Of a stretch of DNA of 64,000 nt, positions 8,154-54,494 are shown in pieces. The notes under the pieces were generated by a model, which worked only from the letters and a program-made list of their open reading frames with translations, made no database searches and was not told where the DNA came from. Within the stretch, counting starts at the first letter, position 1. The number at the start of each line of letters is the position of its first letter. Location of the stretch: contig NW_025963813.1 in assembly GCF_023055435.1 (NCBI RefSeq), forward strand, positions 20,770,001 through 20,834,000. The letters run 5' to 3'. The position numbers and the translations under genes were made by a program. The DNA comes from Haliotis rufescens. Its lineage: Eukaryota.

Positions 8154-9379
8154 CAAAAGTGGACTCGACCGGTACCTTGTCAACTTTCATGATTAATTTT
8201 GTTTTTTTAAAGCATTAAAAGATTTAACTCATTTTGTTATGTATTCAAGATAACAATGCTAAACGATTCCAAAGCTTAACTTCAAAACGTTTCCTTCCAA
8301 GGCGTCAATGGCCGCACCAGTGGTGACCGTCGAATCAGTAACGACATGCAATGCGGCATACAGGTACCCTTACCCATGAAAAGGAACAGATGACTACAAA
8401 GTTTCAAAACACCATATCAGGTTATATCTATCATAAATATTCTTTTAAAAAACAAACAAACACAGAATAGGTTACGGGCAGAGAGGAACCCACATATGTA
8501 TTATTAAAGGTGATTATACGAATATGAGAAACCTCCGAAAAGAATTGATGACGTCACAGAGGTGTCCGTCTCGTCAACTGGCGTCACGTGTGTCCAGTCG
8601 TATCGCTGACCATTTGTGACTGGTCGCAAATGGACATTGACAAGCAGGGACTGCTCGCTTCCGTTCCTTCATCAACAGGTGTGTCGAGTGTGCACGGAGC
8701 CGCAAGGAAGCAAGGATCGTTGTTCAGCTGGCGTTCCACCCAGTCCAGACACTGGCTCCTTGTGGATTTAAGACAATGCAGACTGATCATTATTGAACTG
8801 AATCAGTGAGGATGAAACATGAATCCTATATATTGTGGCCATTCCTGTTAATGCCACATTCCTTTGGGTCACGTCGTACGGGAACTTTAGTCTTGTCGAT
8901 TTAGTTTCGAAAGTATGTCGTTGAATGTTGTGATAATCCATCAACAACATATTGTCCCCTCTTTTTATTTAATGCCGGAGACTATTTACAGCACTGTGTC
9001 ATCTGAGAGTAGCGTCCTCGCAAGACATAACAAAACAGGCTGACACATAAATTTATGAAAGCTTGAAATCATACCACAGTTACAATGATAGAAAATATAT
9101 TATATGCATTACGAGGCTCCCAGTGTCAGAACTTTCAGTTTGCACTGATGATTATATCAATACTTCATACAGCACCAAAGAGTATTATAAATTAACGTCG
9201 CTTGTCGACTAAACACTATTTAGTGGTGCGATGTGGGGTTCAAACTTTAAAACTGTAAAGTGTGAGGCGCAAAAAATTGAAAACAAAAGATTATCAATGT
9301 GTGAAAATCGGCAAAGTTCCTAATCTGTATTGTAGGGCAATCAACCGAGGCAGCACAATCAGAGGCGTTCATCGATGTA

Positions 9380-9830
9380 CAGTACTTTCCCACGATTTGC
9401 GATGAAAGCATTTGAAGCGAAACACACTCGCGGGGCGCACTCTCTCTGTAAACCGAAAACAAACACTAAGTTGGGCTTTGAATTGTATTATTTAGACCAT
9501 CATGTACTGCGTGGTATGGTTGGTTTCTAATCACTTTTGGGGCAAAGAGGGCGGGAAATTCCCACAGACGAAATCTGAGGGTGGTGTAAGTTTCGGCGCG
9601 TGCGGAGAGTTTATCTCGTAAATTTCGCCACTGATTGACGCCTGGGAGTGCTCATTCCACTGCGCGCGCTCCCACTAGCCAATGAAATCTGGTGTCGCGC
9701 ACGACCACCACCCCCCGCAAAGCTTGATTGACAGCCAGTGGGTCTTCTCAGCGTGGGAAACCAAGACTTCGTGCCTTCACAGTGAGCTTGATGTATAAGG
9801 ACGGTAATCGACATCTAAATTCCGATACAT
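9380..9830 (+). promoter_or_regulatory. HES proximal promoter: CSL sites, kappaB site, GC box, Hairy class-C site, CCAAT, Su(H) paired site, TATA
   Basis: TTCCCACG 9387-9394; GGGCGGG 9549-9555; GGGAAATTCCC 9553-9563 overlapping TTCCCACA 9559-9566; GGCGCGTGC 9595-9603; CCAAT 9679-9683 in AGCCAATGA; CGTGGGAA 9752-9759 + 16 bp + TTCACAGT 9776-9783; GTATAAG 9793-9799, about 135 bp before the ATG. Confidence 0.75.
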
Positions 9831-9929
9831 TACATGCCGACGCTCACTCGGCTACCTGTTGCATTGGTAGACATTTCACTGGGAAAGTTGCTCATTTCAA
9901 CAGTCGTGTGGATGTGTTCTTCAGAAACC

Positions 9930-9980
9930 ATGTCGGATACCTGCAGTGATGACAAGCGATCAGGCGCCTCCTCTAGAAGG
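9930..9980 (+). CDS. HES1: HES coding exon 1 ([17 protein letters not shown])
   Basis: AAACCATGT start context; ends at GG|GTGAGT donor (9981); phase 0, joins in frame to the basic region. Confidence 0.88.
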
Positions 9981-12408
9981 GTGAGTTTATAATTTAAAGG
10001 TTTATTTTCATTTTCTTAATTTATTATTTTTATAGTGATAGGTTTTTTAATGCATCATTTTAGTAACTTTTGTCGTTATAAACGTTGACATCGATGGCAT
10101 TTCAACTTGATGTTCGTGTTTCGTGTGTTTCACGACTCACGCACATGTACGTGGTCATTCTACTAATGTATTTACAAAGTGCCCTACTACATGCGCGTGG
10201 ATATTTATTGCAGAGTAACAAACCGCTCATGGAAAAAAGACGGCGAGCTCGGATAAATGAGTGTCTCGGGCAGCTGAAATCTCTTGTCCTACAGGCTCTG
10301 AAGAAAGACGTAAGTGAAAACAGCTGATCCCACAGGTGACGTCCGGCACTGATACTGCTATACTCTAGCTGTGTTGACCGACACCTGTGGCTGTGAGATC
10401 ATCAAGTCAGTCAACGCACTGTCTTGTATTGCCGTGGATACTTTACGGTACCAATCATGTGTAGTGACATTATATATATGTATAAAGTTCGGTCATATGT
10501 AAAACTCTCACGCTCGTAGGCAATATCTCAAGTACAATCACAATATTTGATTACAAATTTCAATGACAGATATGTCAACACTATATGTTCATGGAGGACG
10601 ATTATATCGTATGCAGAAGATAGTTAATGGGTCATTTAGTTTGGAGTAGTTTCTTTCTCATGGGTCAGCGAGTCTCCACTTCTTTATTTCAAGCTTGGAG
10701 ATATTTACAATTGAGCTAACAGTAATTCTTTCAGTTAGACACTAGTTATCTCCCTTTGATTGTAGATCCCATAACCCCAGTCTATAATCTGCATGAATGT
10801 TTACACAGGTCCAAAACCCCAATCATTCACCGTGATGAGTACGAATGCAGGGAGTTCCCTCCCTTAGACAGGTTTACTGTTGAAATACACCAACAATAAT
10901 GTCGCAAGGTTACACAGGTTATCACTTTCTCACGGTGTTTTCAACTCGCTGTTGATAAGCGTGGCTCGCGACAAAGTGAGCGACCGAAGCATTGCAAATA
11001 CATTACGCCGGCTCGCAAACTGAGAGATTTGTACAGAGCTAACAATTCTGAACTTCGGCCAACATTGCCTTCAGCAAAAGCGTGGGAGCGAAAAAGTCGT
11101 GAAACTTTGCGAAATACTTTCGGACAAGAAAGTAAACGGAATCGGAAAAAAACAACCTCGACGGAATTCGTCCTGTTTGGCCTTCGATTATTGGCCATGA
11201 AATCAGAATCAATATGAAATGATAACACACACGCACACGCACGTACGCACGCATACACTCACATTCAAATAAGTGCAGAGCCATATAACATTTGATTTCA
11301 TATTGATGGTGGCTTATGGGGTCAATCAGGGCGATCGTGATTGGATTTTCTCAGATTGTTTGGACATTGCTTTTACAGAATATGTAAGAACTTGCTTTTA
11401 GTGTATTACAGTGTTGATATTCTCAGGTAGATAAAGCAGATTATTCTACAGACACATCCGTCTAATTCGCCATTGTGTATTTCAGAGCACGCAATATTCT
11501 AAACTGGAAAAGGCCGACATCCTGGAGATGACCGTGAAACACCTGAAGCTACTCCAGCGACAACAGATAGCAGGTAATGATAAACGCTATATGACAAATC
11601 GTAGAAACGCAACACCAGATACTAATGCAAGCTAGAACGATACTTATATGTAGCACGATCAGTCAATGTATGCGTTTGAGATCATGTTGTTTTGATATGG
11701 TATTTGGTTTATGTAAGAAGACAACATTCAAGATGAGTCAGGATTGAGTATGGCGCCGTTCAAGTCGTGAACTAATGTATTATCTTTCTTGCTTCAGCGG
11801 CCATGTCCTCCGATCCGTTCCTGATGGGAAAATATCGAGCTGGATTCAACGAATGTGCAGGTGAAGTCGCCAGATACCTCGATGCTGTTAGCGTCAATCA
11901 TGACGTCAAGTCACGCGTTCTCAACCACCTTGCCAACTGTGTGTCTCAGATCCCACCCGAGGCCCAAATCCACCCGGCCCACCTACAAGCCCTCCACGTC
12001 ATCCCTCAAGCCAGCCAGCCTGCGTTCCCCGTCAACAGCCTTGGCCCGTGCACGCCGGTGTGGAACATCGTCCCCTCGTCCGTCACTCACCAGGTCCACA
12101 GTCAACATGCTCGTATAAACGTTTCCCCATATTCCAAAATGGACCGGCCCAGGTTTACACCGTCTCCAGAGAGTAGGTCTCTCCCTGAGAGCCGTTCCTC
12201 CCCAGATTCATCACCTGTGTCTTCCCCGGACTCAAAGAGTGACATAGACCTTTCCTCAAGACGTCAGTGTGAAATGTATACACCTCCACACGTATCTGCG
12301 TCGCCATCTTTGATTTCCGTGAAAAGAGAAAGGGAGACAACTCCGCCCCGACAAGAACTTGAACAACAGTTGGAAGTCGAGGGTGATAAAATGTGGCGAC
12401 CCTGGTGA
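9930..12408 (+). CDS. HES1: hairy/Enhancer-of-split (HES1/HES4-like) bHLH-Orange-WRPW transcriptional repressor; spliced CDS join(9930..9980,10214..10309,11486..11573,11798..12408), 281 aa
   Basis: Splicing at canonical GT-AG sites gives [17 protein letters not shown]|[32 protein letters not shown]|[29 protein letters not shown]|[28 protein letters not shown]...KMWRPW*. It has the HES-diagnostic proline in the basic region, an Orange domain and the C-terminal WRPW Groucho motif. 846 nt, in frame. The symbol indicates family likeness, not proven orthology. Confidence 0.96.
10214..10309 (+). CDS. HES1: HES exon 2 (basic region, helix 1)
   Basis: TTTATTGCAG acceptor, 96 bp, [30 protein letters not shown] donor at 10310. 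Confidence 0.96.
11486..11573 (+). CDS. HES1: HES exon 3 (loop, helix 2)
   Basis: TATTTCAG acceptor, 88 bp, [17 protein letters not shown]|GTAATG donor at 11574 (phase 1). Missed by the ORF track because it is short. Confidence 0.96.
11798..12408 (+). CDS. HES1: HES exon 4 coding part (Orange domain, Ser/Pro-rich region, WRPW)
   Basis: ACTAAT branch-like site at 11771 and TTTCTTGCTTCAG acceptor; phase 1 joins into ORF 11803..12408, which ends WRPW-TGA. Confidence 0.96.
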
Positions 12409-12489
12409 TGAAAACAGTTTCTATAAAACAAGATCACTGACTTAATATGCAGGTTTTATCACAGCAGGGAGGTTGCACGTCTTTCACTT

Positions 12490-12815
12490 CAGTAATATCA
12501 TTGTCACACCGACACACACGTGTATATAATAGTGATATCATTGTGTCACACACAAGTGCCTTGTATATCCGCGATATTGTTCTACACACACGTTCCATGT
12601 ATATCCGTGATATCATTGTGTCACACACACGTGCCTTTTATATCCGTGATATCACTGTGTCACGGACATTTTGTGCCAGGTATATCCGTGATATCTTTGT
12701 GTCACACACGTGCCTTCAATATCCGTGATATCACTGTGTCAGGGACATTTTGTGCCACGTATATCCGTGATATCTTTGTGTCACACACACGTGCCTTGAT
12801 TATCCGCGATATCTG
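12490..12815 (+). repeat. 36-42 bp degenerate minisatellite, about 8 units, in the predicted HES 3' UTR; consensus TATCCGTGATATCWYTGTGTCACACACACGTGCCTT
   Basis: TATCCG recurs at 12566, 12602, 12641, 12683, 12720, 12762, 12801; two alternating unit types. Confidence 0.9.
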
Positions 12816-12972
12816 TCACTTCCACAAATTCACGTGCTTCGTAAATATTGGTGACGTCACTTTTTCCACTTACCCACGTGTCTGCCGCCAGAGGGGGTTG
12901 GTTGGCTGTTGACTTTATGGAAAGGGAATATTCCAAGTGCTCTCTGAGTGTAAGCTCAGATAATTGTGTCAA

Positions 12973-13008
12973 ATTAAACCACCATTTGAAATGCATCTGT
13001 GTTGTTGT
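12973..13008 (+). terminator. Probable HES polyadenylation signal and downstream GU-rich element
   Basis: ATTAAA 12973-12978, CA at 12994-12995, TGTGTTGTTGT 12998-13008. I saw no AATAAA between the stop codon and here. Confidence 0.55.
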
Positions 13009-13335
13009 CCTCTGTATAGACAAGTGTGTGAGAAGTCGGTGCTGCACCAGTCACGCACCGGTCCTGTCTCTTCACACCAGGTAATCGCAGTACTAAGATG
13101 TAAATTCGTAAGTTGGTGCGTTAACGAAACTCGAAGAATAACGAATACATCATGAACACAAGGCAGTATTGCTTTACTATACACAGTATATGAGATAGAA
13201 GAGAGTAATTGTTATATTATGTCTGCGTAATACACCACATGTAAGGATAATGCAGATCAGTTAAAGTGATGCTTGTATATATAAGTGTTTAACAAGTATA
13301 CATCGCAAAGACCTGACTGGAATATGTCAAGGGGT

Positions 13336-14420
13336 GTCGGGCCTCAGTTAGCAGTATTATAGCGAATGACACAGTCGCTACAACACTGCTACCTGTCGCC
13401 TGAACCACACTAGCCTCGGGCCACAGTAAGCCGTGTTGTAGTGAGTGACACTTGCGTCAGGCCTCAGTTAGCAGTATTGTAATGAGTGACACTAGCGTCA
13501 GGCCTCAGTTACCAGTATTGTAGTGAGTGACACTAGCGTCAGGCCTCAGTTAGCAGTATTGTAGTGAGTGACACTAGCGTCGGGCCACAGTTAGCAGTAT
13601 TGTAGCGAGTGACACTAGCGTCGGGCCTCAGTTAGAAGTATTGTAGCGAGTGACACTAGCGTCGGGCCTCAGCAGTATTGTAGCGAGTGACACTAGCCTC
13701 GGGCCTCAGTTAGCAGTATTGTAGTGAGTGACACTAGCGTCGGGCTACAGTGAGCAGTGTTGTACTGAGTGACACTAGCGTCAGGCCTCAGTTACCAGTA
13801 TTGTAGTGAGTGACACTAGCGTCAGGCCTCAGTTAGCAGTATTGTAGTGAGTGACACTAGCGTCGGGCCTCAGTTAGAAGTATTGTAGCGAGTGACACTA
13901 GCGTCAGGCCTCAGCAGTATTGTAGCGAGTGACACTAGCCTCGGGCCTCAGTTAGCAGTATTGTAGTGAGTGACACTAGCGTCGGGCTACAGTGAGCAGT
14001 GTTGTACTGAGTGACACTAGCGTCAGGCCTCAGTTAGCAGTGTTGTAGTTAGTGACACTAGCGTCGGGCCTCAGTTAGAAGTATTGTAGTGAGTGACACT
14101 AGCGTCAGGCCTCAGTTAGCAGTATTGTAGCGAGTGACACTAGCGTCGGGCCACAGTGAGCAGTGTTGTACTGAGTGACACTAGCGGCAGGCCTCAGTTA
14201 GCAGTGTTGTAGTGAGTGACACTTGCGTCGGGCCTCAGTTAGCAGTATTGTAGCGAGTGACACTAGCGTCAGGCCTCAGTTAGCAGTATTGTAGCGAGTG
14301 ACACTAGCGTCGGGCCACAGTGAGCAGTATTGTAGCGAGTGACACTAGCGTCAGGCCTCAGTTAGCAGTATTGTAGCGTGTGACACCAGCGTCGGGCCTC
14401 AGTTAGCTGTATTGTAGTGA
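13336..14420. repeat. 41-bp minisatellite, about 26 copies, GACACTAGCGTCGGGCCTCAGTTAGCAGTATTGTAGTGAGT
   Basis: GACACTAGCG at 13570 and 13611, continuing at the same period. Confidence 0.95.
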
Positions 14421-42287: not shown

Positions 42288-45200
42288 CCATGGGCAACAC
42301 CGACATGGGGAGTACAGACATGGGGAACACCGACATGGGGAGTACAGACATGGGGAACACCGAGATGGCGTGAACAGACATCGGGAACATCGACATTGGT
42401 AGTACAGACATGGGGAACACCAACATGGGGAACATCAACATTGGGAGTGCAGACATGGGGAACAGCGACATAAGGAACACCGACATGGGGAGTACAGATA
42501 TGGGGAACACCGACATGGGGAGTACAGACATGGGGAACACCGACATGGGGAGTACAGACATGGGGAACACCGAGATGGCGTGAACAGACATCGGGAACAT
42601 CGACATTGGGAGTACAGACATGGGGAAGACAAACATGGGGGACATCAACATTGGGAGTGCAGACATGGGGACAGCGACATAAGGAACATCGACATGGGGA
42701 GTACAGATATGGGGAACACCGACATGGGGAGTACAGACATGGGGAACACAGACATGGGCAACATCGACATTGGGAGTACAGACTTGGAAAACACGGACAT
42801 GGGGAGTACAGATATGGGGAACACCGACATGGGGAACATCAACATTTGGAGTACAGACATGGGGAACATCGACATGGGGAGTACAGACATGGGGACACCG
42901 ACATGGGGAGTACAGACATAGGGAACACCGACATTGGAAGTACAGACATGGGTAACACCGACATGGGGAACATCAACATTTGGAGTACAGACATCAGTAA
43001 CACCGACATTGGGAGTACAGACATCGGGAACACCGACATGGGGAACACCGACATGAGGAACACCGACATGGGGAACACAGACATGGAGTGTACAGACATG
43101 GAGAACACCGACATGGGGAGTACAGACATGGGGAACATCGACATGGGGAACATCAACATTTGGAGTACAGACATGGGGAACACCGACATTGGGAGTACAG
43201 ACATGGGGAACACCGACATGGGGAACATCAACATTTGGAGTACAGACATGGGGAACACCGACATTTGGAGTACAGATATGGGTAACACCGACATGGGGAA
43301 CACCGACATGAGGAACACCGACATGGGGAACACCGACATGGGGTGTACAGACATAGGGAACACCGACATGGGGTGTGCAGACATGGGGAACATCGACATT
43401 GGGAGTACAGACATGGGGAACACAGACATGGGGAGTACAGATATGGGGAACACCGACATGGGGTGTGCAGACATGGGGAACATCGACATTGGGAGTACAG
43501 ACATGGGGAACACCGACATGCGGAGTACAGATATGGGGAACACCGACATGGGGAGTACAGATATGGGGAACACCGACATCGGGAACATCGGCATTGGCAG
43601 TACAGACATGGGGAACACCGACTTGGGGAACATCGACATTTGGAGTACAGACATGGGGAACACCGACATGGGGAACACCGACATGGGGAGTACAGATATG
43701 GGGAACACCGACATGGGGAACATCGGCATTGGGAGTACAGACATGGGGAACATCGACATTGGGAGTACAGACATGGGGAACAACGACATGGGGAGTACAG
43801 ACATGTGGAACACCGACATAGGGAGTACAGATATGGGGAACACCGACATGGGGAACATCAACATGGGGAGTACAGACATGGGGAACACCGAGATGGAGTG
43901 AACAGACATAGGGAACATCGACATTGGGAGTACAGACATGGGCAGCACAGACATGGGGAGTACAGATATGGGGAACACCGAGACAGGGAACATCGGGATT
44001 GGGAGTGCAGACATTGGGAACACCGACATGGGGAGTACAGATATAGGGGAACACCGACATGGGGAACATCGGCATTGGCAGTGCAGACATGGGGAACATC
44101 GGCATTGGGAGTACAGACATGGGGAACACCGACATGGGGTGTACAGACATGGGGAATATCAACGTTGGGAGTACAGACATTGCGAACACCGACATGAGGA
44201 ACACCGACATTGGGAACATCGGCATTGGGAGTGCAGACATGGGGAAAATCGACATTGGGAGTACAGACATGGGGAACACAAACATGGGGAGTACAGACAT
44301 GGGGAACACCGACATGGGGAACATCGACATTGGGAGTACAGACATGGGGAACACAGACATTGGGAGTACAGACATGGGGAACACCGACATGAGGAGTACA
44401 GACATGGGTAACACCGACGTAGGGAGTGCAGGCATTGATAACACCGACATTGAGTGAACAGACATGGGGAACACCGACATGGGGAACATCGACATTCGGA
44501 GTACAGACATGGGGAACATCGACATGGGGAGTACAGATATGGGGAACACAGACATGGGAAGTACAGACATGGGGAGTACAGACATGAGGAACACCGACAT
44601 GGGGAGTAGAGACATGGGGAACACCGACATTGGGAGAACATACATGGGAACACTGACATAGGGAACATCGACATTGGGAGTACAGACATGGGGAACACAG
44701 ACATGGGGAGTACAGACATGGGGAGTACAGACATGGGGAGTACAGACATGAGGAACACCGACATGGGGAGTACATATATGGGGAACACCGACATTGGGAG
44801 AACATACATGGGAACACTGACATAGGGAACATCGACATTGGGAGTACAGACATGGGGAACACAGACATGGGGAGTACAGACATTTGGAGTACAGACATGA
44901 GGAACACCGACATGGGGAGTACAAACATAGGGAACACCGACATGGGGTGAACAGACATGGGTAACATCGACATTGGGAGTACATACATGGAAACACAGAC
45001 ATGGGGAGTACAGATATGGGGACACCGACATGGGGAACATCGGCATGGGGAGTACAGATATGGGAACACTGACATTGGGAGTACAGACATGGGGAACTAT
45101 GACATGAGGAACTCCGACATGGGGAATACAGACATGGGGAACACAGACATGGGGTGTACAGACATGGGGAACATCGACATGGGGAGTACAGACATGGGGA

Positions 45201-48200
45201 ACACTGACATTTGGAGTACAGACATGGGGAACACAGACATGGGGAGTACAGACATGGGGAACACCGACATGGGGAACATCGACATTGGGAGTACAGACAT
45301 GGGGAACACAGACATTGGGAGTACAGACATGGGGAACACAGACATGAGGAGTACAGACATGGGTAACACCGACGTAGGGAGTGCAGGCATTGATAACACC
45401 GACATTGAGTGAACAGACATGGGGAACACCGACATGGGGAACATCGACATTCGGAGTACAGACATGGGGAACATCGACATGGGGAGTACAGATATGGGGA
45501 ACACGTACATAGGGAGTACAGACATGGGAAGTACAGACATGGGGAGTACAGACATGAGGAACACCGACATGGGGAGTAGAGACATGGGGAACACCGACAT
45601 TGGGAGAACATACATGGGAACACTGACATAGGGAACATCGACATTGGGAGTACAGACATGGGGAACACAGACATGGGGAGTACAGACATTGGGAGTACAG
45701 ACATGAGGAACACCGACATGGGGAGTACAAACATAGGGAACACCGACATGGGGTGTACAGACATGGGTAACATCGACATTGGGAGTACATACATGGAAAC
45801 ACAGACATGGGGAGTACAGATATGGGGACACCGACATGGGGAACATCGGCATGGGGAGTACAGATATGGGAACACTGACATTGGGAGTACAGACATGGGG
45901 AACTATGACATGAGGAACTCCGACATGGGGAATACAGACATGGGGAACACAGACATGGGGTGTACAGACATGGGGAACATCGACATGGGGAGTACAGACA
46001 TGGGGAACACTGACATTCGGAGTACAGACATGGGGAACACAGACATGGGGAGTACAGACATGGGGAACTATGACATGAGGAACACCGACATGGGGAGTAC
46101 ATATATGCGGAACACCGACATTGGGAGAACAGACATGGGAACACTGACATAGGGAACATCGACATTGGGATTACAGACATGGGGAACATCGACATGGGGA
46201 GTACAGACATGGGGAACACCGACATTGGGAGTACAGATATGGGAAACACCGACATGGGGAATACAGACATGGGTAACACCGACATGGGGAACATCAACAT
46301 TTGGAGTACAGACATAGGGAACATCAACATTTGGATTACAGACATGGGGAACACTGACATTGGGAACATCTGCATGAGGAACATCGACATTGGGAACATC
46401 TGCATGAGGAACACCGACATGGGGAGAACAGACATGGGGAACACCGATATTGGGCGTACAGACATGAGGAACACCGACATGGGGAGTACAGACATGAGGA
46501 ACACCGACATGGGGAGTACAGACATGGGGAACACCGCTATTGGGAACATCGGCATGAGGAACACCGACATGGTGAGTACAGACATGAGGAACATCGACAT
46601 GGGGAACATCGACATTGGGAGTACAGACATGGGGAACACCGACATGGGGAACATCGACATTGGGAGTACAGATATGGGGAACACCGACAGGGGGAACATC
46701 AACATTTGGAGTACAGACATGGGGAACACCGACATGGGGAACAGCGACATTGGGAGTACAGACATGGGGAACATCGGCATTGGGAGTACAGATATGGGGA
46801 ATACAGACATGGGGAACATCGGCATTGGGAGTACAGATACGGGGAACACCGACATGGGGAACATCAACATTTGGAGTACAGACATGGGGAACACCGACAT
46901 GGGGAACATCGACATTGGGAGTACAGACATGGGGAATACCGACATGGGGAGTACAGACATGGGGAACACCGAGATGGAGTGAACAGACATAGGGAAGATC
47001 GACATTGGGAGTACAGACATGGGGAGCACAGACATGGGGAGTACAGACATGGGGAACACCGACATAGGGAACATCGGCATTGGGAGTGCAGACATGGGGA
47101 ATACCGACATGGGGAGTACAGAAATGGGGAACACCGACATGGGGAATACAGACATGGGGAACACCGACATGGGGTGTAGAGACATGGGGAACACCGACAT
47201 GGGGTGTACAGACATGGGGAACACCGACATGGGGAACATCAACATCGGGAATACAGAAATGGGCAACACCGACATGGGCAGTACACACATGGGGAACACC
47301 GACATGTGGTGTACAGACATGGGGAACAGCGACATGGGGTGTACAGACATGGGGAACATCGACATGGGCAGCACAGACATGGGGAGTACAGATATTGGGA
47401 ATACCGACATAGGGAACATCGGCATTGGGAGTGCAGACATGGGGAACATCGCCATTGGGAGTGCAGACATGGAGAATACTGACATGGGGAGTACAGAAAT
47501 CGGGAACACCGACATGGGGTGTACAGACATGGGGAACACCGACATGGGGTGTACAGACATGGGGAACATCAACATTGGGAGTACAGACATGGGGAACATC
47601 GACATTGTTGGTACAGACATCGAAAACACGGATATTGGGAGTACAGATATGGGGAACACGGACATGGGGAACATCAACATTGGGAGTACAGACATGGGAA
47701 ACACCGACATGGGGAATACAGACATGGGTAACACCGACATGTGGTGTACAGACATGGGGAACATCGACATTGGGAGTACAGACATGGGGAACATCAACAT
47801 TGGGAGTACAGACATGGGGAACACCGCCGTCATGGGGTGTACAGAAATGGGGAACAACGACATGGGGTGTACAGACATGGGGAACATCGACATTGGGAGC
47901 ACAGACATGGGGAACACCGCCGTCATGGGGTGTACAGAAATGGGGAACAACGACATGGGGTGTACAGACATGGGGAACATCGACATTGGGAGCACAGACA
48001 TGGGGAACACCGACATGAGGAACACCGTAATCGGGAGTACATACATAGGGAACATCGACATGGGGTGTACAGACATGGGGAACATCGACATTGGGAGTAC
48101 AGACATGGGGAACACAGACATGGGGAGGACAGGTATGGGGAACACCGACATGGGGAACATCGGCATGGGGAGTACAGATATGGGAACACTGACATGGGGA

Positions 48201-48650
48201 GTACAGACATTGGGAACATCGACATGGGAAGAAAAAACATGGGGAACTATGACATGAGGAACACCGACATGGGGAGTACAGACATGGGTAACACCGACAT
48301 GGGGAGTACAGACATGGGGAACACTGACATGAGGAACACCGACATGGGGAGTACAGAAATGGGGAACACCGACATGGGGAGTACAGACATGGGGAACACT
48401 GACATGAGGAACACCGACATGGGGAGTACAGACATGAGGAACACCGACATGGGGAGTACAGACATGAGGAACACCGACATGGGGAGTACAGACATGGGGA
48501 ACATCGACATGTTGTGTACAGACATGGGAAACACAGACATGGGGAGTACAGACATGGGGAACATCAACATTGGGAGTACAGACATGGGGAACACCGACAT
48601 GGGGAACATCGGCATTGGGAGTACAGACTTGGGGAACACCGAAATGGGGA
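42288..48650. repeat. 15-bp G-rich satellite, about 420 units, GACATGGGGAACACC / GACATGGGGAGTACA
   Basis: GACAT every 15 bp with occasional 1-bp indels; internal duplication with a marker at 44416 and 45371. Confidence 0.97.
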
Positions 48651-51600
48651 TATATATATGGCACGACACAGATACACACTGCAGTATGTGATGTATACAT
48701 ATAGCACCTCACAGATACACACTGCAATATGTGATATATATATAGCACCTCACAGATACACACTGCGGTATGTGATGTATATAGCACCTCACAGATACAC
48801 ACTGCAATAGGTGATATATATAGCACCTCACAGATACACACTGCAATATGTCATGTATATAGCACCTCACAGATACACACTGCAATATGTCATGTATATA
48901 GCACCTCACAGATACACACTGCAAAATGTGATATATAAAGCACCTCACAGATACACACTGCAATATGTGATATATATAGCACCTCACAGATACACACTGC
49001 AATATGTGATATAAATAGCACCTCACAGATACACACTGCAATATGTGATATTTATAGCACCTCACAGATACACACAGCAATATGTGATGTATATAGCACC
49101 TCACAGATACACACTGCAAAATGTGATATATAAAGCACCTCACAGATACACACTGCAATATGTGATATATATAGCACCTCACATACACACACTGCAATAT
49201 GTAAAATATATATAGCACCTCACAGATACACACTGCAATATGTCATGTATATAGCACCTCACAGATACACACTGCAATATGTCATGTATATAGCACCTCA
49301 CAGATACACACTGCAATATGTCATGTATATAGCACCTCACAGATACACTGCAGTATGTCATGTATATAGCACCTCACAGATACACACTGCAATATGTCAT
49401 GTATATAGCACCTCACAGATACACACTGCAATATGTCATGTATATTGCACCTCACAGATACACACTGCAATATGTAATGTATATTGCACCTCACAGATAC
49501 ACACTGCAATATGTCATGTATATAGCACCTCACATACACACACTGCAATATGTAAAATATATATAGCACCTCACAGATACACACTGCAATATCTCATGTA
49601 TATAGCACCTCACAGATACACACTGCAATATGTCATGTATATTGCACCTCACAGATACACACTGCAATATGTGATATATATAGCACCTCACATACACACA
49701 CTGCAATATGTAAAATATATATAGCACCTCACAGATACACACTGCAATATGTCATGTATATAGCACCTCACAGACACACTGCAATGTGTGATCTACATAG
49801 CACCTCACAGATACACTGCAATATGCCATGTATATAGCACCTCACAGACACACTGCAATGTGTGATATAAGTAGCACCTCACAGATACACACTGCAATAT
49901 GTGATATTTATAGCACCTCACAGATACACACTGCAATATGTAATGTATATAGCACCTCACATAGACACACTGCAAAATGTGATATATAAAGCACCTCACA
50001 GATACACACTGCAATATGTGATATATATAGCACCTCACATACACACACTGCAATATGTAAAATATATATAGCACCTCACAGATACACACTGCAATATGTC
50101 ATGTATATAGCATCTCACAGATACACACTGCAAAATGTGATATATAAAGCACCTCACAGATACACACTGCAATATGTGATATATATAGCACCTCACAGAT
50201 ACACACTGCAATATGTGATATATATAGCACCTCACATACACACACTGCAATATGTAAAATATATATAGCACCTCACAGATACACACTGCAATATGTCATG
50301 TATATAGCACCTCACAGATACACACTGCAATATGTCATGTATATAGCACCTCACAGATACACACTGCAATATGCCATGTATATAGCACCTCACAGATACA
50401 CACTGCAGTATTTCATGTATATAGCACCTCACAGATACACACTGCAATATGTCATGTATATAGCACCTCACAGATACACACTGCAATATGTCATGTATAT
50501 TGCACCTCACAGATACACACTGCAATATGTGATATATATAGCACCTCACATACACACACTGCAATATGTAAAATATATATAGCACCTCACAGATACACAC
50601 TGCAATATGTCATGTATATAGCACCTCACAGATACACACTGCAATATGTCATGTATATAGCACCTCACAGATACAGAGTGCAATATGTCATGTATATAGA
50701 ACCTCACAGACACACTGCAATATGTCATGTATATAGCACCTCACAGATACACACTGCAATATGTCATGTATATTGCACCTCACAGATACACACTGCAATA
50801 TGTAATGTATATTGCACCTCACAGATACACACTGCAATATGTAATGTATATTGCACCTCACATACACACACTGCAATATGTAAAATATATATAGCACCTC
50901 ACAGATACACACTGCAATATCTCATGTATATAGCACCTCACAGATACACACTGCAATATGTCATGTATATTGCACCTCACAGATACACACTGCAATATGT
51001 GATATATATAGCACCTCACATACACACACTGCAATATGTAAAATATATATAGCACCTCACAGATACACACTGCAATATGTCATGTATATAGCACCTCACA
51101 GACACACTGCAATGTGTGATCTACATAGCACCTCACAGATACACTGCAATATGCCATGTATATAGCACCTCACAGACACACTGCAATGTGTGATATAAGT
51201 AGCACCTCACAGATACACACTGCAATATGTGATATTTATAGCACCTCACAGATACACACTGCAATATGTAATGTATATAGCACCTCACATAGACACACTG
51301 CAAAATGTGATATATAAAGCACCTCACAGATACACACTGCAATATGTGATATATATAGCACCTCACATACACACACTGCAATATGTAAAATATATATAGC
51401 ACCTCACAGATACACACTGCAATATGTCATGTATATAGCATCTCACAGATACACACTGCAAAATGTGATATATAAAGCACCTCACAGATACACACTGCAA
51501 TATGTGATATATATAGCACCTCACAGATACACACTGCAATATGTGATATATATAGCACCTCACATACACACACTGCAATATGTAAAATATATATAGCACC

Positions 51601-54494
51601 TCACAGATACACACTGCAATATGTCATGTATATAGCACCTCACAGATACACACTGCAATATGTCATGTATATAGCACCTCACAGATACACACTGCAATAT
51701 GCCATGTATATAGCACCTCACAGATACACACTGCAGTATTTCATGTATATAGCACCTCACAGATACACACTGCAATATGTCATGTATATAGCACCTCACA
51801 GATACACACTGCAATATGTCATGTATATTGCACCTCACAGATACACACTTCAATATGTGATATATATAGCACCTCACATACACACACTGCAATATGTAAA
51901 ATATATATAGCACCTCACAGATACACACTGCAATATGTCATGTATATAGCACCTCACAGATACACACTGCAATATGTCATGTATATAGCACCTCACAGAT
52001 ACAGAGTGCAATATGTCATGTATATAGAACCTCACAGACACACTGCAATGTGTGATCTATATAGCACCTCAGAGATACACTGCAATATGTGATGTATACA
52101 GCACCTCACAGATACACTGCAATTATTCATGTATACAGCACCTCACAGACACGCTGCAATATGTGATGTATATAGCACCTCACAGATACACTGCAATATG
52201 TCATGTATACAGCACCTCACAGACACGCTGCAATATGTCATGTATATAGCACCTCAGAGACACACTGCAATATGTCATGTATACAGCACCTCACAGACAC
52301 GCTGTAATATGTGATGTATATAGCACCTCACAGATACACTGCAATATGTCATGTATACAGCACCTCACAGATACACTGCAATTAGTCATGTATACAGCAC
52401 CTCACAGACACGCTGCAATATGTGATGTATATAACACCTCACAGACACACTGCAATATGTCATGTATACAGCACCTCACAGACACGCTGCAATATGTGAT
52501 GTATATAGCACCTCACAGATACACTGCAATATGTCATGTATACAGCACCTCACAGATACACACTGCAATATGTCATGTATACAGCACCTCACAGATACAC
52601 ACTGCAATATGTCATGTATACAGCACCTCACAGATACACACTGCAATATGTGATATATATAGCACCTCACATACACACACTGCAATATGTAAAATATATA
52701 TAGCACCTCACAGATACACACTGCAATATGTCATGTATATAGCATCTCACAGATACACACTGCAAAATGTGATATATAAAGCACCTCACAGATACACACT
52801 GCAATATGTGATATATATAGCACCTCACAGATACACACTGCAATATGTGATATATATAGCACCTCACATACACACACTGCAATATGTAAAATATATATAG
52901 CACCTCACAGATACACACTGCAATATGTCATGTATATAGCACCTCACAGATACACACTGCAATATGTCATGTATATAGCACCTCACAGATACACACTGCA
53001 ATATGCCATGTATATAGCACCTCACAGATACACACTGCAGTATTTCATGTATATAGCACCTCACAGATACACACTGCAATATGTCATGTATATAGCACCT
53101 CACAGATACACACTGCAATATGTCATGTATATTGCACCTCACAGATACACACTTCAATATGTGATATATATAGCACCTCACATACACACACTGCAATATG
53201 TAAAATATATATAGCACCTCACAGATACACACTGCAATATGTCATGTATATAGCACCTCACAGATACACACTGCAATATGTCATGTATATAGCACCTCAC
53301 AGATACAGAGTGCAATATGTCATGTATATAGAACCTCACAGACACACTGCAATGTGTGATCTATATAGCACCTCAGAGATACACTGCAATATGTGATGTA
53401 TACAGCACCTCACAGATACACTGCAATTATTCATGTATACAGCACCTCACAGACACGCTGCAATATGTGATGTATATAGCACCTCACAGATACACTGCAA
53501 TATGTCATGTATACAGCACCTCACAGACACGCTGCAATATGTGATGTATATAGCACCTCAGAGACACACTGCAATATGTCATGTATACAGCACCTCACAG
53601 ACACGCTGTAATATGTGATGTATATAGCACCTCACAGATACACTGCAATATGTCATGTATACAGCACCTCACAGATACACTGCAATTAGTCATGTATACA
53701 GCACCTCACAGACACGCTGCAATATGTGATGTATATAACACCTCACAGACACACTGCAATATGTCATGTATACAGCACCTCACAGACACGCTGCAATATG
53801 TGATGTATATAGCACCTCACAGATACACTGCAATATGTCATGTATACAGCACCTCACAGATACACACTGCAATATGTCATGTATACAGCACCTCACAGAT
53901 ACGCACTGCAATATGTCATGTATACAGCACCTCACAGATACACACTGCAATATGTCATGTATACAGCACCTCATAGACACACTGCAATATGTCATGTATA
54001 TAGCACCTCACAGATACACTGCAATATGTCATGTATACAGCACCTCACAGATACACTGCAATATGTCATGTATACAGCACCTCACAGACACGCTGCAATA
54101 TGTGATGTATATAGCACCTCACAGATACACTGCAATATGTCATGTATACAGCACCTCACAGATACACTGCAATATGTCATGTATACAGCACCTCCAGATA
54201 CACACTGCAATATGTCATGTATACAGCACCTCACAGATACACACTGCAATATGTCATGTATACAGCACCTCACAGACACGCTGCAATATGTGATGTATAT
54301 AGCACCTCACAGATACACTGCAATATGTCATGTATACAGCACCTCACAGATACACTGCAATATGTCATGTATACAGCACCTCACAGATACACACTGCAAT
54401 ATGTGATGTATATAGCACCTCACAGACACGCTGCAATATGTGATGTATACAGCACCTCACAGATACACTGCAATATGTCATGTATACAGCACCT
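48651..54494. repeat. 39/37-bp satellite, about 150 units, ATAGCACCTCACAGATACACACTGCAATATGTCATGTAT
   Basis: GCACCTCACA every 37-41 bp; higher-order blocks recur at 1328- and 1304-bp offsets. Confidence 0.97.

What the first reader, a model, noticed from the sequence alone, without database searches (positions are those of the whole stretch)
12490..12815. A minisatellite in the HES 3' UTR has multiplied a miR-124 target site
Seen: the repeat lies between the stop codon (12408) and the likely poly(A) signal (12973). It contains GTGCCTT four times (12556, 12631, 12710, 12791), three of them extended to CGTGCCTT, spaced 75-81 nt apart. One Pumilio-type TGTATATA is at 12521. Established: miR-124 (UAAGGCACG...) is a pan-bilaterian neuronal miRNA whose seed (nt 2-8) pairs with GTGCCTT and whose nt 9 pairs with the preceding C; miR-124 repression of Hes/Notch-pathway transcripts has been reported in chordates. 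Inference: tandem duplication has built a multi-site miR-124 cassette, so repeat copy number could tune how sharply HES is shut off in differentiating neurons. This is my best candidate for an undescribed regulatory device here. Caveat: the four sites descend from one ancestral site, so they are not independent evidence.
Basis: partly seen in the sequence, partly recalled or inferred. Interest (0 to 1): 0.8.

Follow-up and report, generated by a model that had tools for sequence, protein, structure and literature searches.

The report
Repeated miR-124 sites in abalone HES 3' UTR
A short tandem repeat inside the tail (3' UTR) of an abalone Notch-pathway HES gene really does carry four matches to the neuronal microRNA miR-124 and really is in the mRNA. 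Nothing shows that the multiplication was selected or that copy number varies, so it is a plausible but fairly ordinary new case of a known kind of regulation.

Summary
Observation confirmed. GTGCCTT occurs four times (12556, 12631, 12710, 12791), 75/79/81 nt apart. The sites lie in a ~39-nt / 79-nt tandem repeat directly downstream of a four-exon bHLH-Orange-WRPW gene. Its last exon is 100% identical to Haliotis rufescens HES-1-like.

Spliced RNA contigs from three studies run through the whole repeat. Two end in poly(A) at 12993/12995, about 20 nt after the ATTAAA at 12973. The repeat therefore lies inside a 585-nt 3' UTR. The genome encodes a canonical mir-124.

The "regulatory device" reading is not supported:
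- Only 4 of about 8-10 units keep the seed, and the seed is no better conserved than its flanks (P≈0.35).
- The UTR diverges from a close relative as fast as the introns do.
- The repeat structure is identical in the assembly and two transcriptomes.
- Site spacing lies outside the cooperative range.
- About 46% of the window is minisatellite, and periodic GTGCCTT arrays are common genome-wide.
- Only 1 of 6 HES paralogues has a site.

The same letters also form CACGTGCC, an E(spl)/Hey-type DNA site.

miR-124 repression of Hes genes (Ciona) and miRNA sites carried in a 3' UTR repeat (SHISA7) are both published.

Verdict: likely miR-124-responsive, probably a by-product of repeat formation. Modest interest.

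The parts
9752..9783 (+). Paired Su(H)/CSL-type site (CGTGGGAA ... TTCACAG) upstream of the TATA box. It marks the gene as a likely direct Notch target. A fifth GTGCCTT (9771) lies in its spacer, outside the organism-A transcript contigs.
9845..9980 (+). Exon 1 as covered by RNA contigs (the 5' end is approximate). ATG at 9930 gives [17 protein letters not shown]. The NCBI model starts at an in-frame ATG at 9834.
   Evidence: Spliced contigs; translation; P0001 alignment.
10214..10309 (+). Exon 2: basic region and helix 1 ([32 protein letters not shown]), with the HES-type proline.
   Evidence: GT..AG joints in three runs; translation.
11486..11573 (+). Exon 3: loop and helix 2 of the bHLH.
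   Evidence: Joints; translation.
11798..12408 (+). Coding part of exon 4: Orange domain and C-terminal WRPW; stop TGA at 12406-12408.
   Evidence: Pfam Hairy_orange E=9e-15; 100% identical to XP_046352091.1.
12409..12993 (+). 3' UTR, 585 nt.
   Evidence: X1 contig covers 11795-12993 with 0 mismatches and then A8. X13 contig reaches 12995 and then A21.
12489..12890 (+). Tandem repeat. Clear units U1-U7 span 12531-12805 (39-42 nt). A-type (seed-bearing) and B-type units alternate, giving a 79-nt higher-order repeat. U0 (12489-12530) and U8-U9 (12806-12890) are decayed units.
   Evidence: The unit occurs nowhere else in the genome.
12556..12562 (+). miR-124 7mer-m8 match, site 1 (AAGTGCCTTG).
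12631..12637 (+). miR-124 7mer-m8 match, site 2 (CACGTGCCTTT).
12710..12716 (+). miR-124 7mer-m8 match, site 3 (CACGTGCCTTC).
12791..12797 (+). miR-124 7mer-m8 match, site 4 (CACGTGCCTTG).
12517..12880 (.). Six CACGTG class-B E-boxes (12517, 12628, 12707, 12788, 12831, 12875). Three are CACGTGCC and overlap the miR-124 matches. Two lie in decayed units that have lost the seed.
12521..12528 (+). Single Pumilio-type UGUAUAUA. It is changed in the related organism B (T>C at 12521).
12973..12978 (+). Poly(A) signal ATTAAA. Cleavage is at about 12993-12995.

Best explanation
The stretch is an old tandem duplication that arose locally. It has about eight recognisable 39-42-nt units organised as a two-unit, 79-nt higher-order repeat, plus decayed units at the edges. 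It lies wholly inside the 585-nt 3' UTR of a Notch-type HES gene of red abalone (HES-1-like).

Every second unit carries a canonical 7mer-m8 match to miR-124, and the genome encodes miR-124 with the canonical mature sequence.

Most likely mechanism (inferred): in cells that express miR-124, meaning differentiating and mature neurons, each of the four sites independently recruits AGO-miR-124. The sites are 75-81 nt apart, so their effects should add rather than cooperate. This would speed deadenylation and decay of the HES mRNA and help shut off a progenitor-state repressor.

The multiplication itself is most likely a by-product of rampant minisatellite formation in this genome, not a selected or tunable device.

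Shown here: the anatomy, presence in the mRNA, the poly(A) site, the miR-124 gene, and HES identity. Inferred: any repression in vivo.
For: Four exact seed matches. Spliced, polyadenylated contigs cover the repeat in three studies and two organism labels. mir-124 scores 53.3 bits against a 49-bit cut-off, with mature UAAGGCACGCGGUGAAUGCCAAG. HES identity and domains are confirmed. The promoter has paired Su(H) sites. Predicted seed accessibility is average to high, at the 47th-93rd percentile of the UTR. Duplex energies are -16 to -19.5 kcal/mol, with some 3' pairing to GUGUCAC. There is no proximal poly(A) signal that would skip the sites. One unlinked HES paralogue (L006) has an independent CGTGCCTTG 17 nt before its ATTAAA. 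[quoted passage not shown] By-product reading: about 46% of the window is minisatellite, and periodic GTGCCTT triplets give 2683 genome matches.
Against: There is no expression, AGO-binding or reporter data. The seed is intact in only 4 of 8-10 units. U2 and U8 look like decayed copies (GTTCCAT, GTGCTTC) and the B units read GTGCCAG / GTGCCAC. There is no excess conservation of the seed among the A units (P≈0.35). The UTR differs from organism B by 7 events in 585 nt (1.2%), against 16 in 1708 nt (0.94%) in introns and flank and 1 in 846 nt in coding sequence. No site has the A opposite miRNA position 1. Five of six paralogues lack a site. Orthologue UTRs were not available.
Confidence: 0.5

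Rival explanations
1. Neutral passenger. The repeat is one more minisatellite in a genome full of them. The miR-124 matches are a coincidence of its unit sequence and have no meaningful effect in vivo.
For: The window is about 46% minisatellite. About 13 separate periodic-GTGCCTT arrays lie in the first 68 Mb of one contig. GTGCCTT is only one of 24 heptamers multiplied four or more times in this UTR. The seed is lost in half of the units. The UTR diverges at the intron rate. The heptamer is not enriched in the window. Paralogue UTRs mostly lack it.
Against: Four canonical 7mer-m8 sites in a confirmed 3' UTR normally respond to an abundant miRNA. The specific pairing of miR-124 with a Hes gene has experimental precedent (PMC4063677). 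The chance of this particular heptamer arising in a 585-nt UTR is about 0.03.
Confidence: 0.3
2. Tandem duplication was selected to build a multi-site miR-124 cassette, and repeat copy number tunes how sharply HES is shut off.
For: Four sites in the mRNA. Site number is reported to affect reporter output in the human SHISA7 3' UTR tandem repeat (PMC7398795).
Against: Repeat structure is identical, with 0 mismatches and 0 gaps, in the assembly and in contigs from two separate studies. The higher-order copies are already about 8% diverged and the A/B units about 28%. That is an old, decaying array, not an actively varying one. There is no constraint signal on the seeds. The 75-81 nt spacing lies outside the roughly 13-35 nt cooperative range (established knowledge: Grimson 2007, Saetrom 2007).
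Confidence: 0.1
3. DNA-level element. The repeat is a cluster of class-B E-boxes (CACGTG, three of them CACGTGCC) bound by HES/Hey-type or other bHLH factors, for example for HES auto-repression. On this reading the miR-124 match is the accidental 3' half of that site.
For: Six CACGTG lie within 364 nt, where about 0.13 would be expected from the rest of the window. They keep a 43-44 nt period into the decayed units U8 and U9, and U0 also keeps one, although all three units have lost CCTT. tggCACGTGcca is the optimal E(spl)/Hey site (PMC1950541). The CpG is retained in most units.
Against: The sites descend from one unit, so they are not independent. CACGTG is not enriched in the window as a whole (28 found against 23.7 expected). 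The B units have TGTGCC. Known HES auto-repression acts through promoter N-boxes (PMC1950541). No binding data exist.
Confidence: 0.08

Closest known systems
miR-124 repression of Notch and the three Hes genes in Ciona intestinalis (Chen, San Pedro & Zeller 2011, as described in PMC4063677 and PMC10970066)
   Same: Same miRNA, same target family, and canonical seed sites in the transcript. The logic is also the same: a neuronal miRNA shuts off a Notch effector.
   Different: The Ciona link is validated experimentally; here there is only sequence and transcript evidence. The host is a mollusc. The sites were multiplied by a tandem repeat. Only 2 of 7 abalone HES-family genes have a site, against all three in Ciona.
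Tandem repeat (VNTR) carrying miRNA binding sites in the human SHISA7 3' UTR (PMC7398795)
   Same: A tandem repeat inside a 3' UTR multiplies the binding site of one miRNA, and the number of sites is proposed to set the output.
   Different: That case involves a young primate miRNA (miR-3681) and a polymorphic repeat. Here the miRNA is ancient and pan-bilaterian, and no copy-number variation was seen.
K-box, Brd-box and GY-box motifs in Drosophila E(spl)/Brd 3' UTRs (established knowledge; cited in PMC4063677)
   Same: Notch-target bHLH repressor mRNAs held down through multiple short miRNA seed matches in the 3' UTR.
   Different: The motifs and miRNAs differ. This UTR has no K-, Brd- or GY-box, although paralogues L005, L006, L008 and L009 have K-box cores.
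E(spl)/Hey class-B binding site tggCACGTGcca (PMC1950541)
   Same: CACGTGCC occurs in three units and CACGTG in six.
   Different: Only half of the palindrome matches. The location is a 3' UTR rather than a promoter or enhancer. No binding evidence exists.

Membership tests
Canonical animal miRNA target site (miR-124, 7mer-m8) | Perfect Watson-Crick match to miRNA nucleotides 2-8 | tested here: met
   Four GTGCCTT against mature UAAGGCACG... read from the genome's own mir-124 locus. None has A opposite position 1, so they are 7mer-m8 and not 8mers.
Canonical animal miRNA target site (miR-124, 7mer-m8) | Site lies in the 3' UTR of the mature mRNA | tested here: met
   Spliced contigs in X1, X9 and X13 cover 11795-12993. 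Poly(A) tails begin at 12993/12995.
Canonical animal miRNA target site (miR-124, 7mer-m8) | Cognate miRNA encoded and expressed in the organism | tested here: inconclusive
   The gene is present (Rfam RF00239, 53.3 bits against a 49-bit cut-off). Expression was not tested.
Canonical animal miRNA target site (miR-124, 7mer-m8) | Site conserved in orthologous UTRs | tested here: inconclusive
   No listed difference in organism B falls in a heptamer. Its listed contigs cover sites 1, 2 and 4; site 3 is reached only by an unlisted contig. At about 1% divergence this has no power.
Canonical animal miRNA target site (miR-124, 7mer-m8) | Seed-dependent repression or AGO binding | not testable with these tools
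   Needs a reporter assay or AGO-CLIP.
HES / Hairy-E(spl) bHLH-Orange-WRPW repressor | bHLH with a proline in the basic region, an Orange domain, and C-terminal WRPW | tested here: met
   [14 protein letters not shown]. Hairy_orange E=9e-15, and HLH E=1.7e-14 on P0001. The protein ends ...DKMWRPW*.
Minisatellite / VNTR | Head-to-tail units of about 10-100 nt | tested here: met
   Period 39 and 79, TRF scores 284 and 373.
Minisatellite / VNTR | Copy number varies between individuals | tested here: inconclusive
   Contigs from two studies of organism A match the assembly with 0 gaps. Organism B contigs break inside the repeat, and only a 2-nt CA insertion is seen. Three samples are too few to decide.
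Pumilio response element | UGUANAUA, conserved | tested here: not met
   There is one match at 12521. Organism B has T>C at its first base in both its RNA and DNA contigs.
E(spl)/Hey class-B binding-site cluster | CACGTG core with tgg...cca flanks, bound by the factor | tested here: inconclusive
   The core is present six times. The 3' flank 'cc' is present in three and the 5' flank never matches. Binding cannot be tested here.

The most novel reading that the evidence does not exclude
The ten-letter core CACGTGCCTT is a dual-use module. As DNA it is an E(spl)/Hey-type auto-repression site, and as RNA it is a miR-124 site. Tandem amplification of this module in abalone was selected as a dosage-tunable off-switch for a Notch effector. 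That would be the first such case in Lophotrochozoa and would show that miR-124-Hes coupling is ancestral to bilaterians.
Probability: 0.07. Interest if true: 0.65.

Novelty: new member of a known kind. Interest (0 to 1): 0.3.

Why it matters
If the sites work, abalone would extend direct miR-124 repression of a HES gene from Ciona, the one animal where it is validated, to a mollusc. That would argue that this coupling between a neuronal miRNA and the Notch effector is old, or easily re-evolved. It would also give a natural example of how tandem duplication can raise miRNA site number in one step. As it stands, the case is a clean, testable prediction and not a discovery. Both ingredients are already described: miR-124 acting on Hes, and miRNA sites multiplied by a 3' UTR repeat.

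Tried and rejected
1. Orthologous 3' UTRs.

2. Metagenome scan with the 18-nt MWRPW-stop string. It gave 42 loci, but all match only at the pattern itself and are chance hits in unrelated DNA.

3. Dispersed repeat or transposon origin. Rejected: the 282-nt array and the 31-nt unit (up to 3 mismatches) occur only at this locus.

4. A shared ancestral 'K-box plus miR-124 site' module with paralogue L006. By eye, GTGATAT followed about 20 nt later by ACGTGCCTTG looked similar. Rejected: local alignment scores of this UTR against paralogue UTRs do not exceed shuffles. L006 scored 21 against a shuffle mean of 20.4. L004 reached P≈0.02 before correction for six tests.

5. Extra constraint on the seed among the A units. 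Not found (P≈0.35).

6. Rfam scan of the window for any structured RNA. Nothing found.

7. Other HES-type UTR motifs (K-, Brd- and GY-box, miR-9 site, AU-rich element) in this UTR. None found.

8. The joined, spliced protein was not assembled or searched.

Full report
**What is there**

Reading 11000-13400 and 8600-11000 shows a four-exon gene on the + strand. I translated the exons one at a time, and the joined spliced protein was deliberately not assembled or searched.
- Exon 1 gives [17 protein letters not shown].
- Exon 2 gives [32 protein letters not shown].
- Exon 3 gives [29 protein letters not shown].
- Exon 4 gives a 202-residue piece with an Orange domain, ending DKMWRPW-stop.

The stop codon is at 12406-12408. 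The exon-4 protein is 100% identical to XP_046352091.1, 'transcription factor HES-1-like [Haliotis rufescens]'. Orthologues at 99%, 95% and 92% identity exist in H. cracherodii, H. rubra and H. asinina. This looks like a direct Notch target.

**The repeat**

Tandem Repeats Finder reports 12532-12813 as period 39 (7.2 copies, 72% matches) and period 79 (3.6 copies, 86% matches). Aligning the units shows two alternating subtypes.
- A units (U1, U3, U5, U7) read ...GTGTCACACACA(C/A)GTGCCTT...
- B units (U4, U6) read ...GTGTCA(C/G)GGACATTTTGTGCCA(G/C)...
- U2 is a decayed A-like unit (CGTTCCAT).
- U0, U8 and U9 at the edges are older, more decayed copies.

The two best higher-order copies are 92% identical. 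The array and its unit are found nowhere else in the 1.33-Gb genome. It therefore arose locally and is not part of a dispersed element.

GTGCCTT is at 12556, 12631, 12710 and 12791. Spacing is 75, 79 and 81 nt, and three of the four are preceded by C. TGTATATA is at 12521, and the only A[AT]TAAA in the UTR is at 12973.

**Is it in the mRNA? Yes**

Laying contigs of four public runs on 9700-13400 gave spliced contigs with GT..AG joints at 9979/10213, 10309/11486 and 11570/11795. These appeared in X1 and X9 (organism A, two studies) and X13 (organism B, a third study).
- The X1 contig covers 11795-12993 with no mismatch or gap and runs on into A8.
- The X13 contig reaches 12995 and runs on into A21.

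The 3' UTR is therefore 12409-12993 (585 nt). The ATTAAA at 12973 is the signal in use, and the whole repeat is transcribed. No upstream canonical poly(A) signal could produce a short isoform without the sites.

**Is the miRNA there? The gene is**

The genome has one locus above Rfam's mir-124 cut-off, at 53.3 bits against 49. Its 3' arm reads UAAGGCACGCGGUGAAUGCCAAG. Expression was not tested. miRNA-seq runs exist, but the single read-laying run had been used.

**Quality of the sites**
- All four are 7mer-m8 with no A opposite position 1.
- They lie 148-383 nt after the stop codon and 196-431 nt before the poly(A) site.
- Local AU content is average, at 0.57-0.63 against 0.58 for the whole UTR.
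- Predicted accessibility is at the 47th to 93rd percentile of the UTR.
- Predicted duplex energies are -16 to -19.5 kcal/mol, with some 3' pairing to the GUGUCAC of each unit. A heptamer in the promoter, used as a control, gives -17.4.

From established knowledge (Grimson 2007, Saetrom 2007), sites cooperate when about 13-35 nt apart. At 75-81 nt they should act additively.

**Is there evidence of selection? None found**
1. Only 4 of 8-10 units keep the seed.
2. Among the four A units, 5 of 39 columns vary and none lies in the seed. The chance of that is 0.35.
3. Against organism B, the UTR shows 7 differences in 585 nt (1.2%). Introns and flank show 16 in 1708 nt (0.94%), and coding sequence shows 1 in 846 nt. 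The UTR as a whole is not visibly constrained. No difference falls in a heptamer, but at about 1% divergence that carries no weight. One difference (T>C at 12521) changes the Pumilio motif.
4. Repeat structure is identical in the assembly and in two transcriptome contigs of organism A. Together with 8-28% divergence between units, this points to an old, decaying array and not an actively varying one.

**Background**

About 46% of the window is minisatellite, in 15 arrays. Genome-wide, three GTGCCTT spaced 60-80 nt apart match 2683 times, against 979 for the reversed pattern. They fall into about 13 separate arrays in the first 68 Mb of one contig. GTGCCTT is one of 24 heptamers present four or more times in this UTR.

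My own rough calculation assumes about 70 heptamers would count as sites for pan-bilaterian miRNAs. On that basis, roughly one such repeat in ten would show a 'multiplied conserved miRNA site' by chance. For miR-124 specifically, the chance of an ancestral site in a 585-nt UTR is about 0.03 (from the shuffle mean).

**Paralogues**

Six further HES-type last exons are in the genome. Only L006 has a GTGCCTT in its likely 3' UTR, at +481 and 17 nt before an ATTAAA. It sits with a miR-9-type site and a K-box. Finding one or more among six by chance has P≈0.13. This UTR shares no alignable module with any paralogue UTR.

**A second reading of the same letters**

In three units the match is part of CACGTGCC. 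CACGTG occurs six times in 364 nt and persists, in period, in the decayed edge units that have lost CCTT. CACGTG is the preferred E(spl)/Hey site, with tggCACGTGcca as the optimum (PMC1950541). This supports a minor rival, a DNA-level bHLH site cluster.

**Comparison with what is known**

[quoted passage not shown] 2011). miR-124 also modulates Notch signalling in planarians and sea urchins (PMC10970066), and it is present in a molluscan CNS (PMC6163488). A human 3' UTR tandem repeat carrying sites for one miRNA, with site number affecting reporter output, has been published (PMC7398795). This case is therefore a new member of known kinds, not a new kind.

**Limits**

A metagenome scan gave only chance hits.

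**Verdict**

The anatomy is confirmed and the transcript evidence is strong. miR-124 responsiveness is likely on general principles: four canonical sites, the right gene family, and a published precedent. The claim that duplication built a selected, tunable cassette has no support, and several observations count against it. Interest is modest.

Noticed in passing
window 1734-63994: Fifteen minisatellite arrays (periods 25-286 nt, up to 6.4 kb each) cover about 29.7 kb, or 46% of the window. Examples are 42289-48650 and 48655-54494, back to back. None besides the finding carries GTGCCTT periodically.
   Followed up: partly
window 9752-9799: A paired Su(H)-type site (CGTGGGAA, a 16-nt spacer, then TTCACAG) lies directly upstream of TATAA (9794). 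A GTGCCTT at 9771 sits in the spacer.
   Followed up: partly
window 9834-9929: The NCBI model (313 aa) starts at an in-frame ATG at 9834, only about 36 nt after the TATA box. RNA contigs of organism A begin at 9843/9845, after that ATG, so the 32-residue N-terminal extension may not be translated. Contigs cannot fix a 5' end, and the organism B contig starts at 9757.
   Followed up: partly
L006 (G000:C212, about 3.296 Mb, - strand), +360 to +510 after the stop: This HES paralogue's 3' UTR packs four motifs into the last 140 nt before ATTAAA: a miR-9-type site (CACCAAAGA), a perfect 14-nt palindrome GTGTCACGTGAC AC around CACGTG, a K-box (CTGTGATA) and a miR-124 7mer-m8 (CGTGCCTTG).
   Followed up: partly
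L008 and L009 (G000:C35, about 2.54 and 2.63 Mb): Two HES paralogues have several K-box cores (TGTGAT) soon after the stop: +27, +127 and +169 in L008, and +44 and +207 in L009.
   Followed up: partly
G000:C35:20867501 (L004), about 85 kb downstream of this gene: A second HES-type gene lies on the same strand (50% identical over the Orange region). This suggests a loose tandem pair.
   Followed up: no
window 11225-11263: A (CA/CG)n microsatellite in intron 2 attracts many unrelated high-depth contigs in the DNA run (depth 470). It is a mapping artefact and not a feature.
   Followed up: no
window 12757: Organism B carries a variant A>T in unit U6, seen in about a third of the summed contig depth. 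It turns GTGCCAC into GTGCCTC, one step from the miR-124 heptamer.
   Followed up: no
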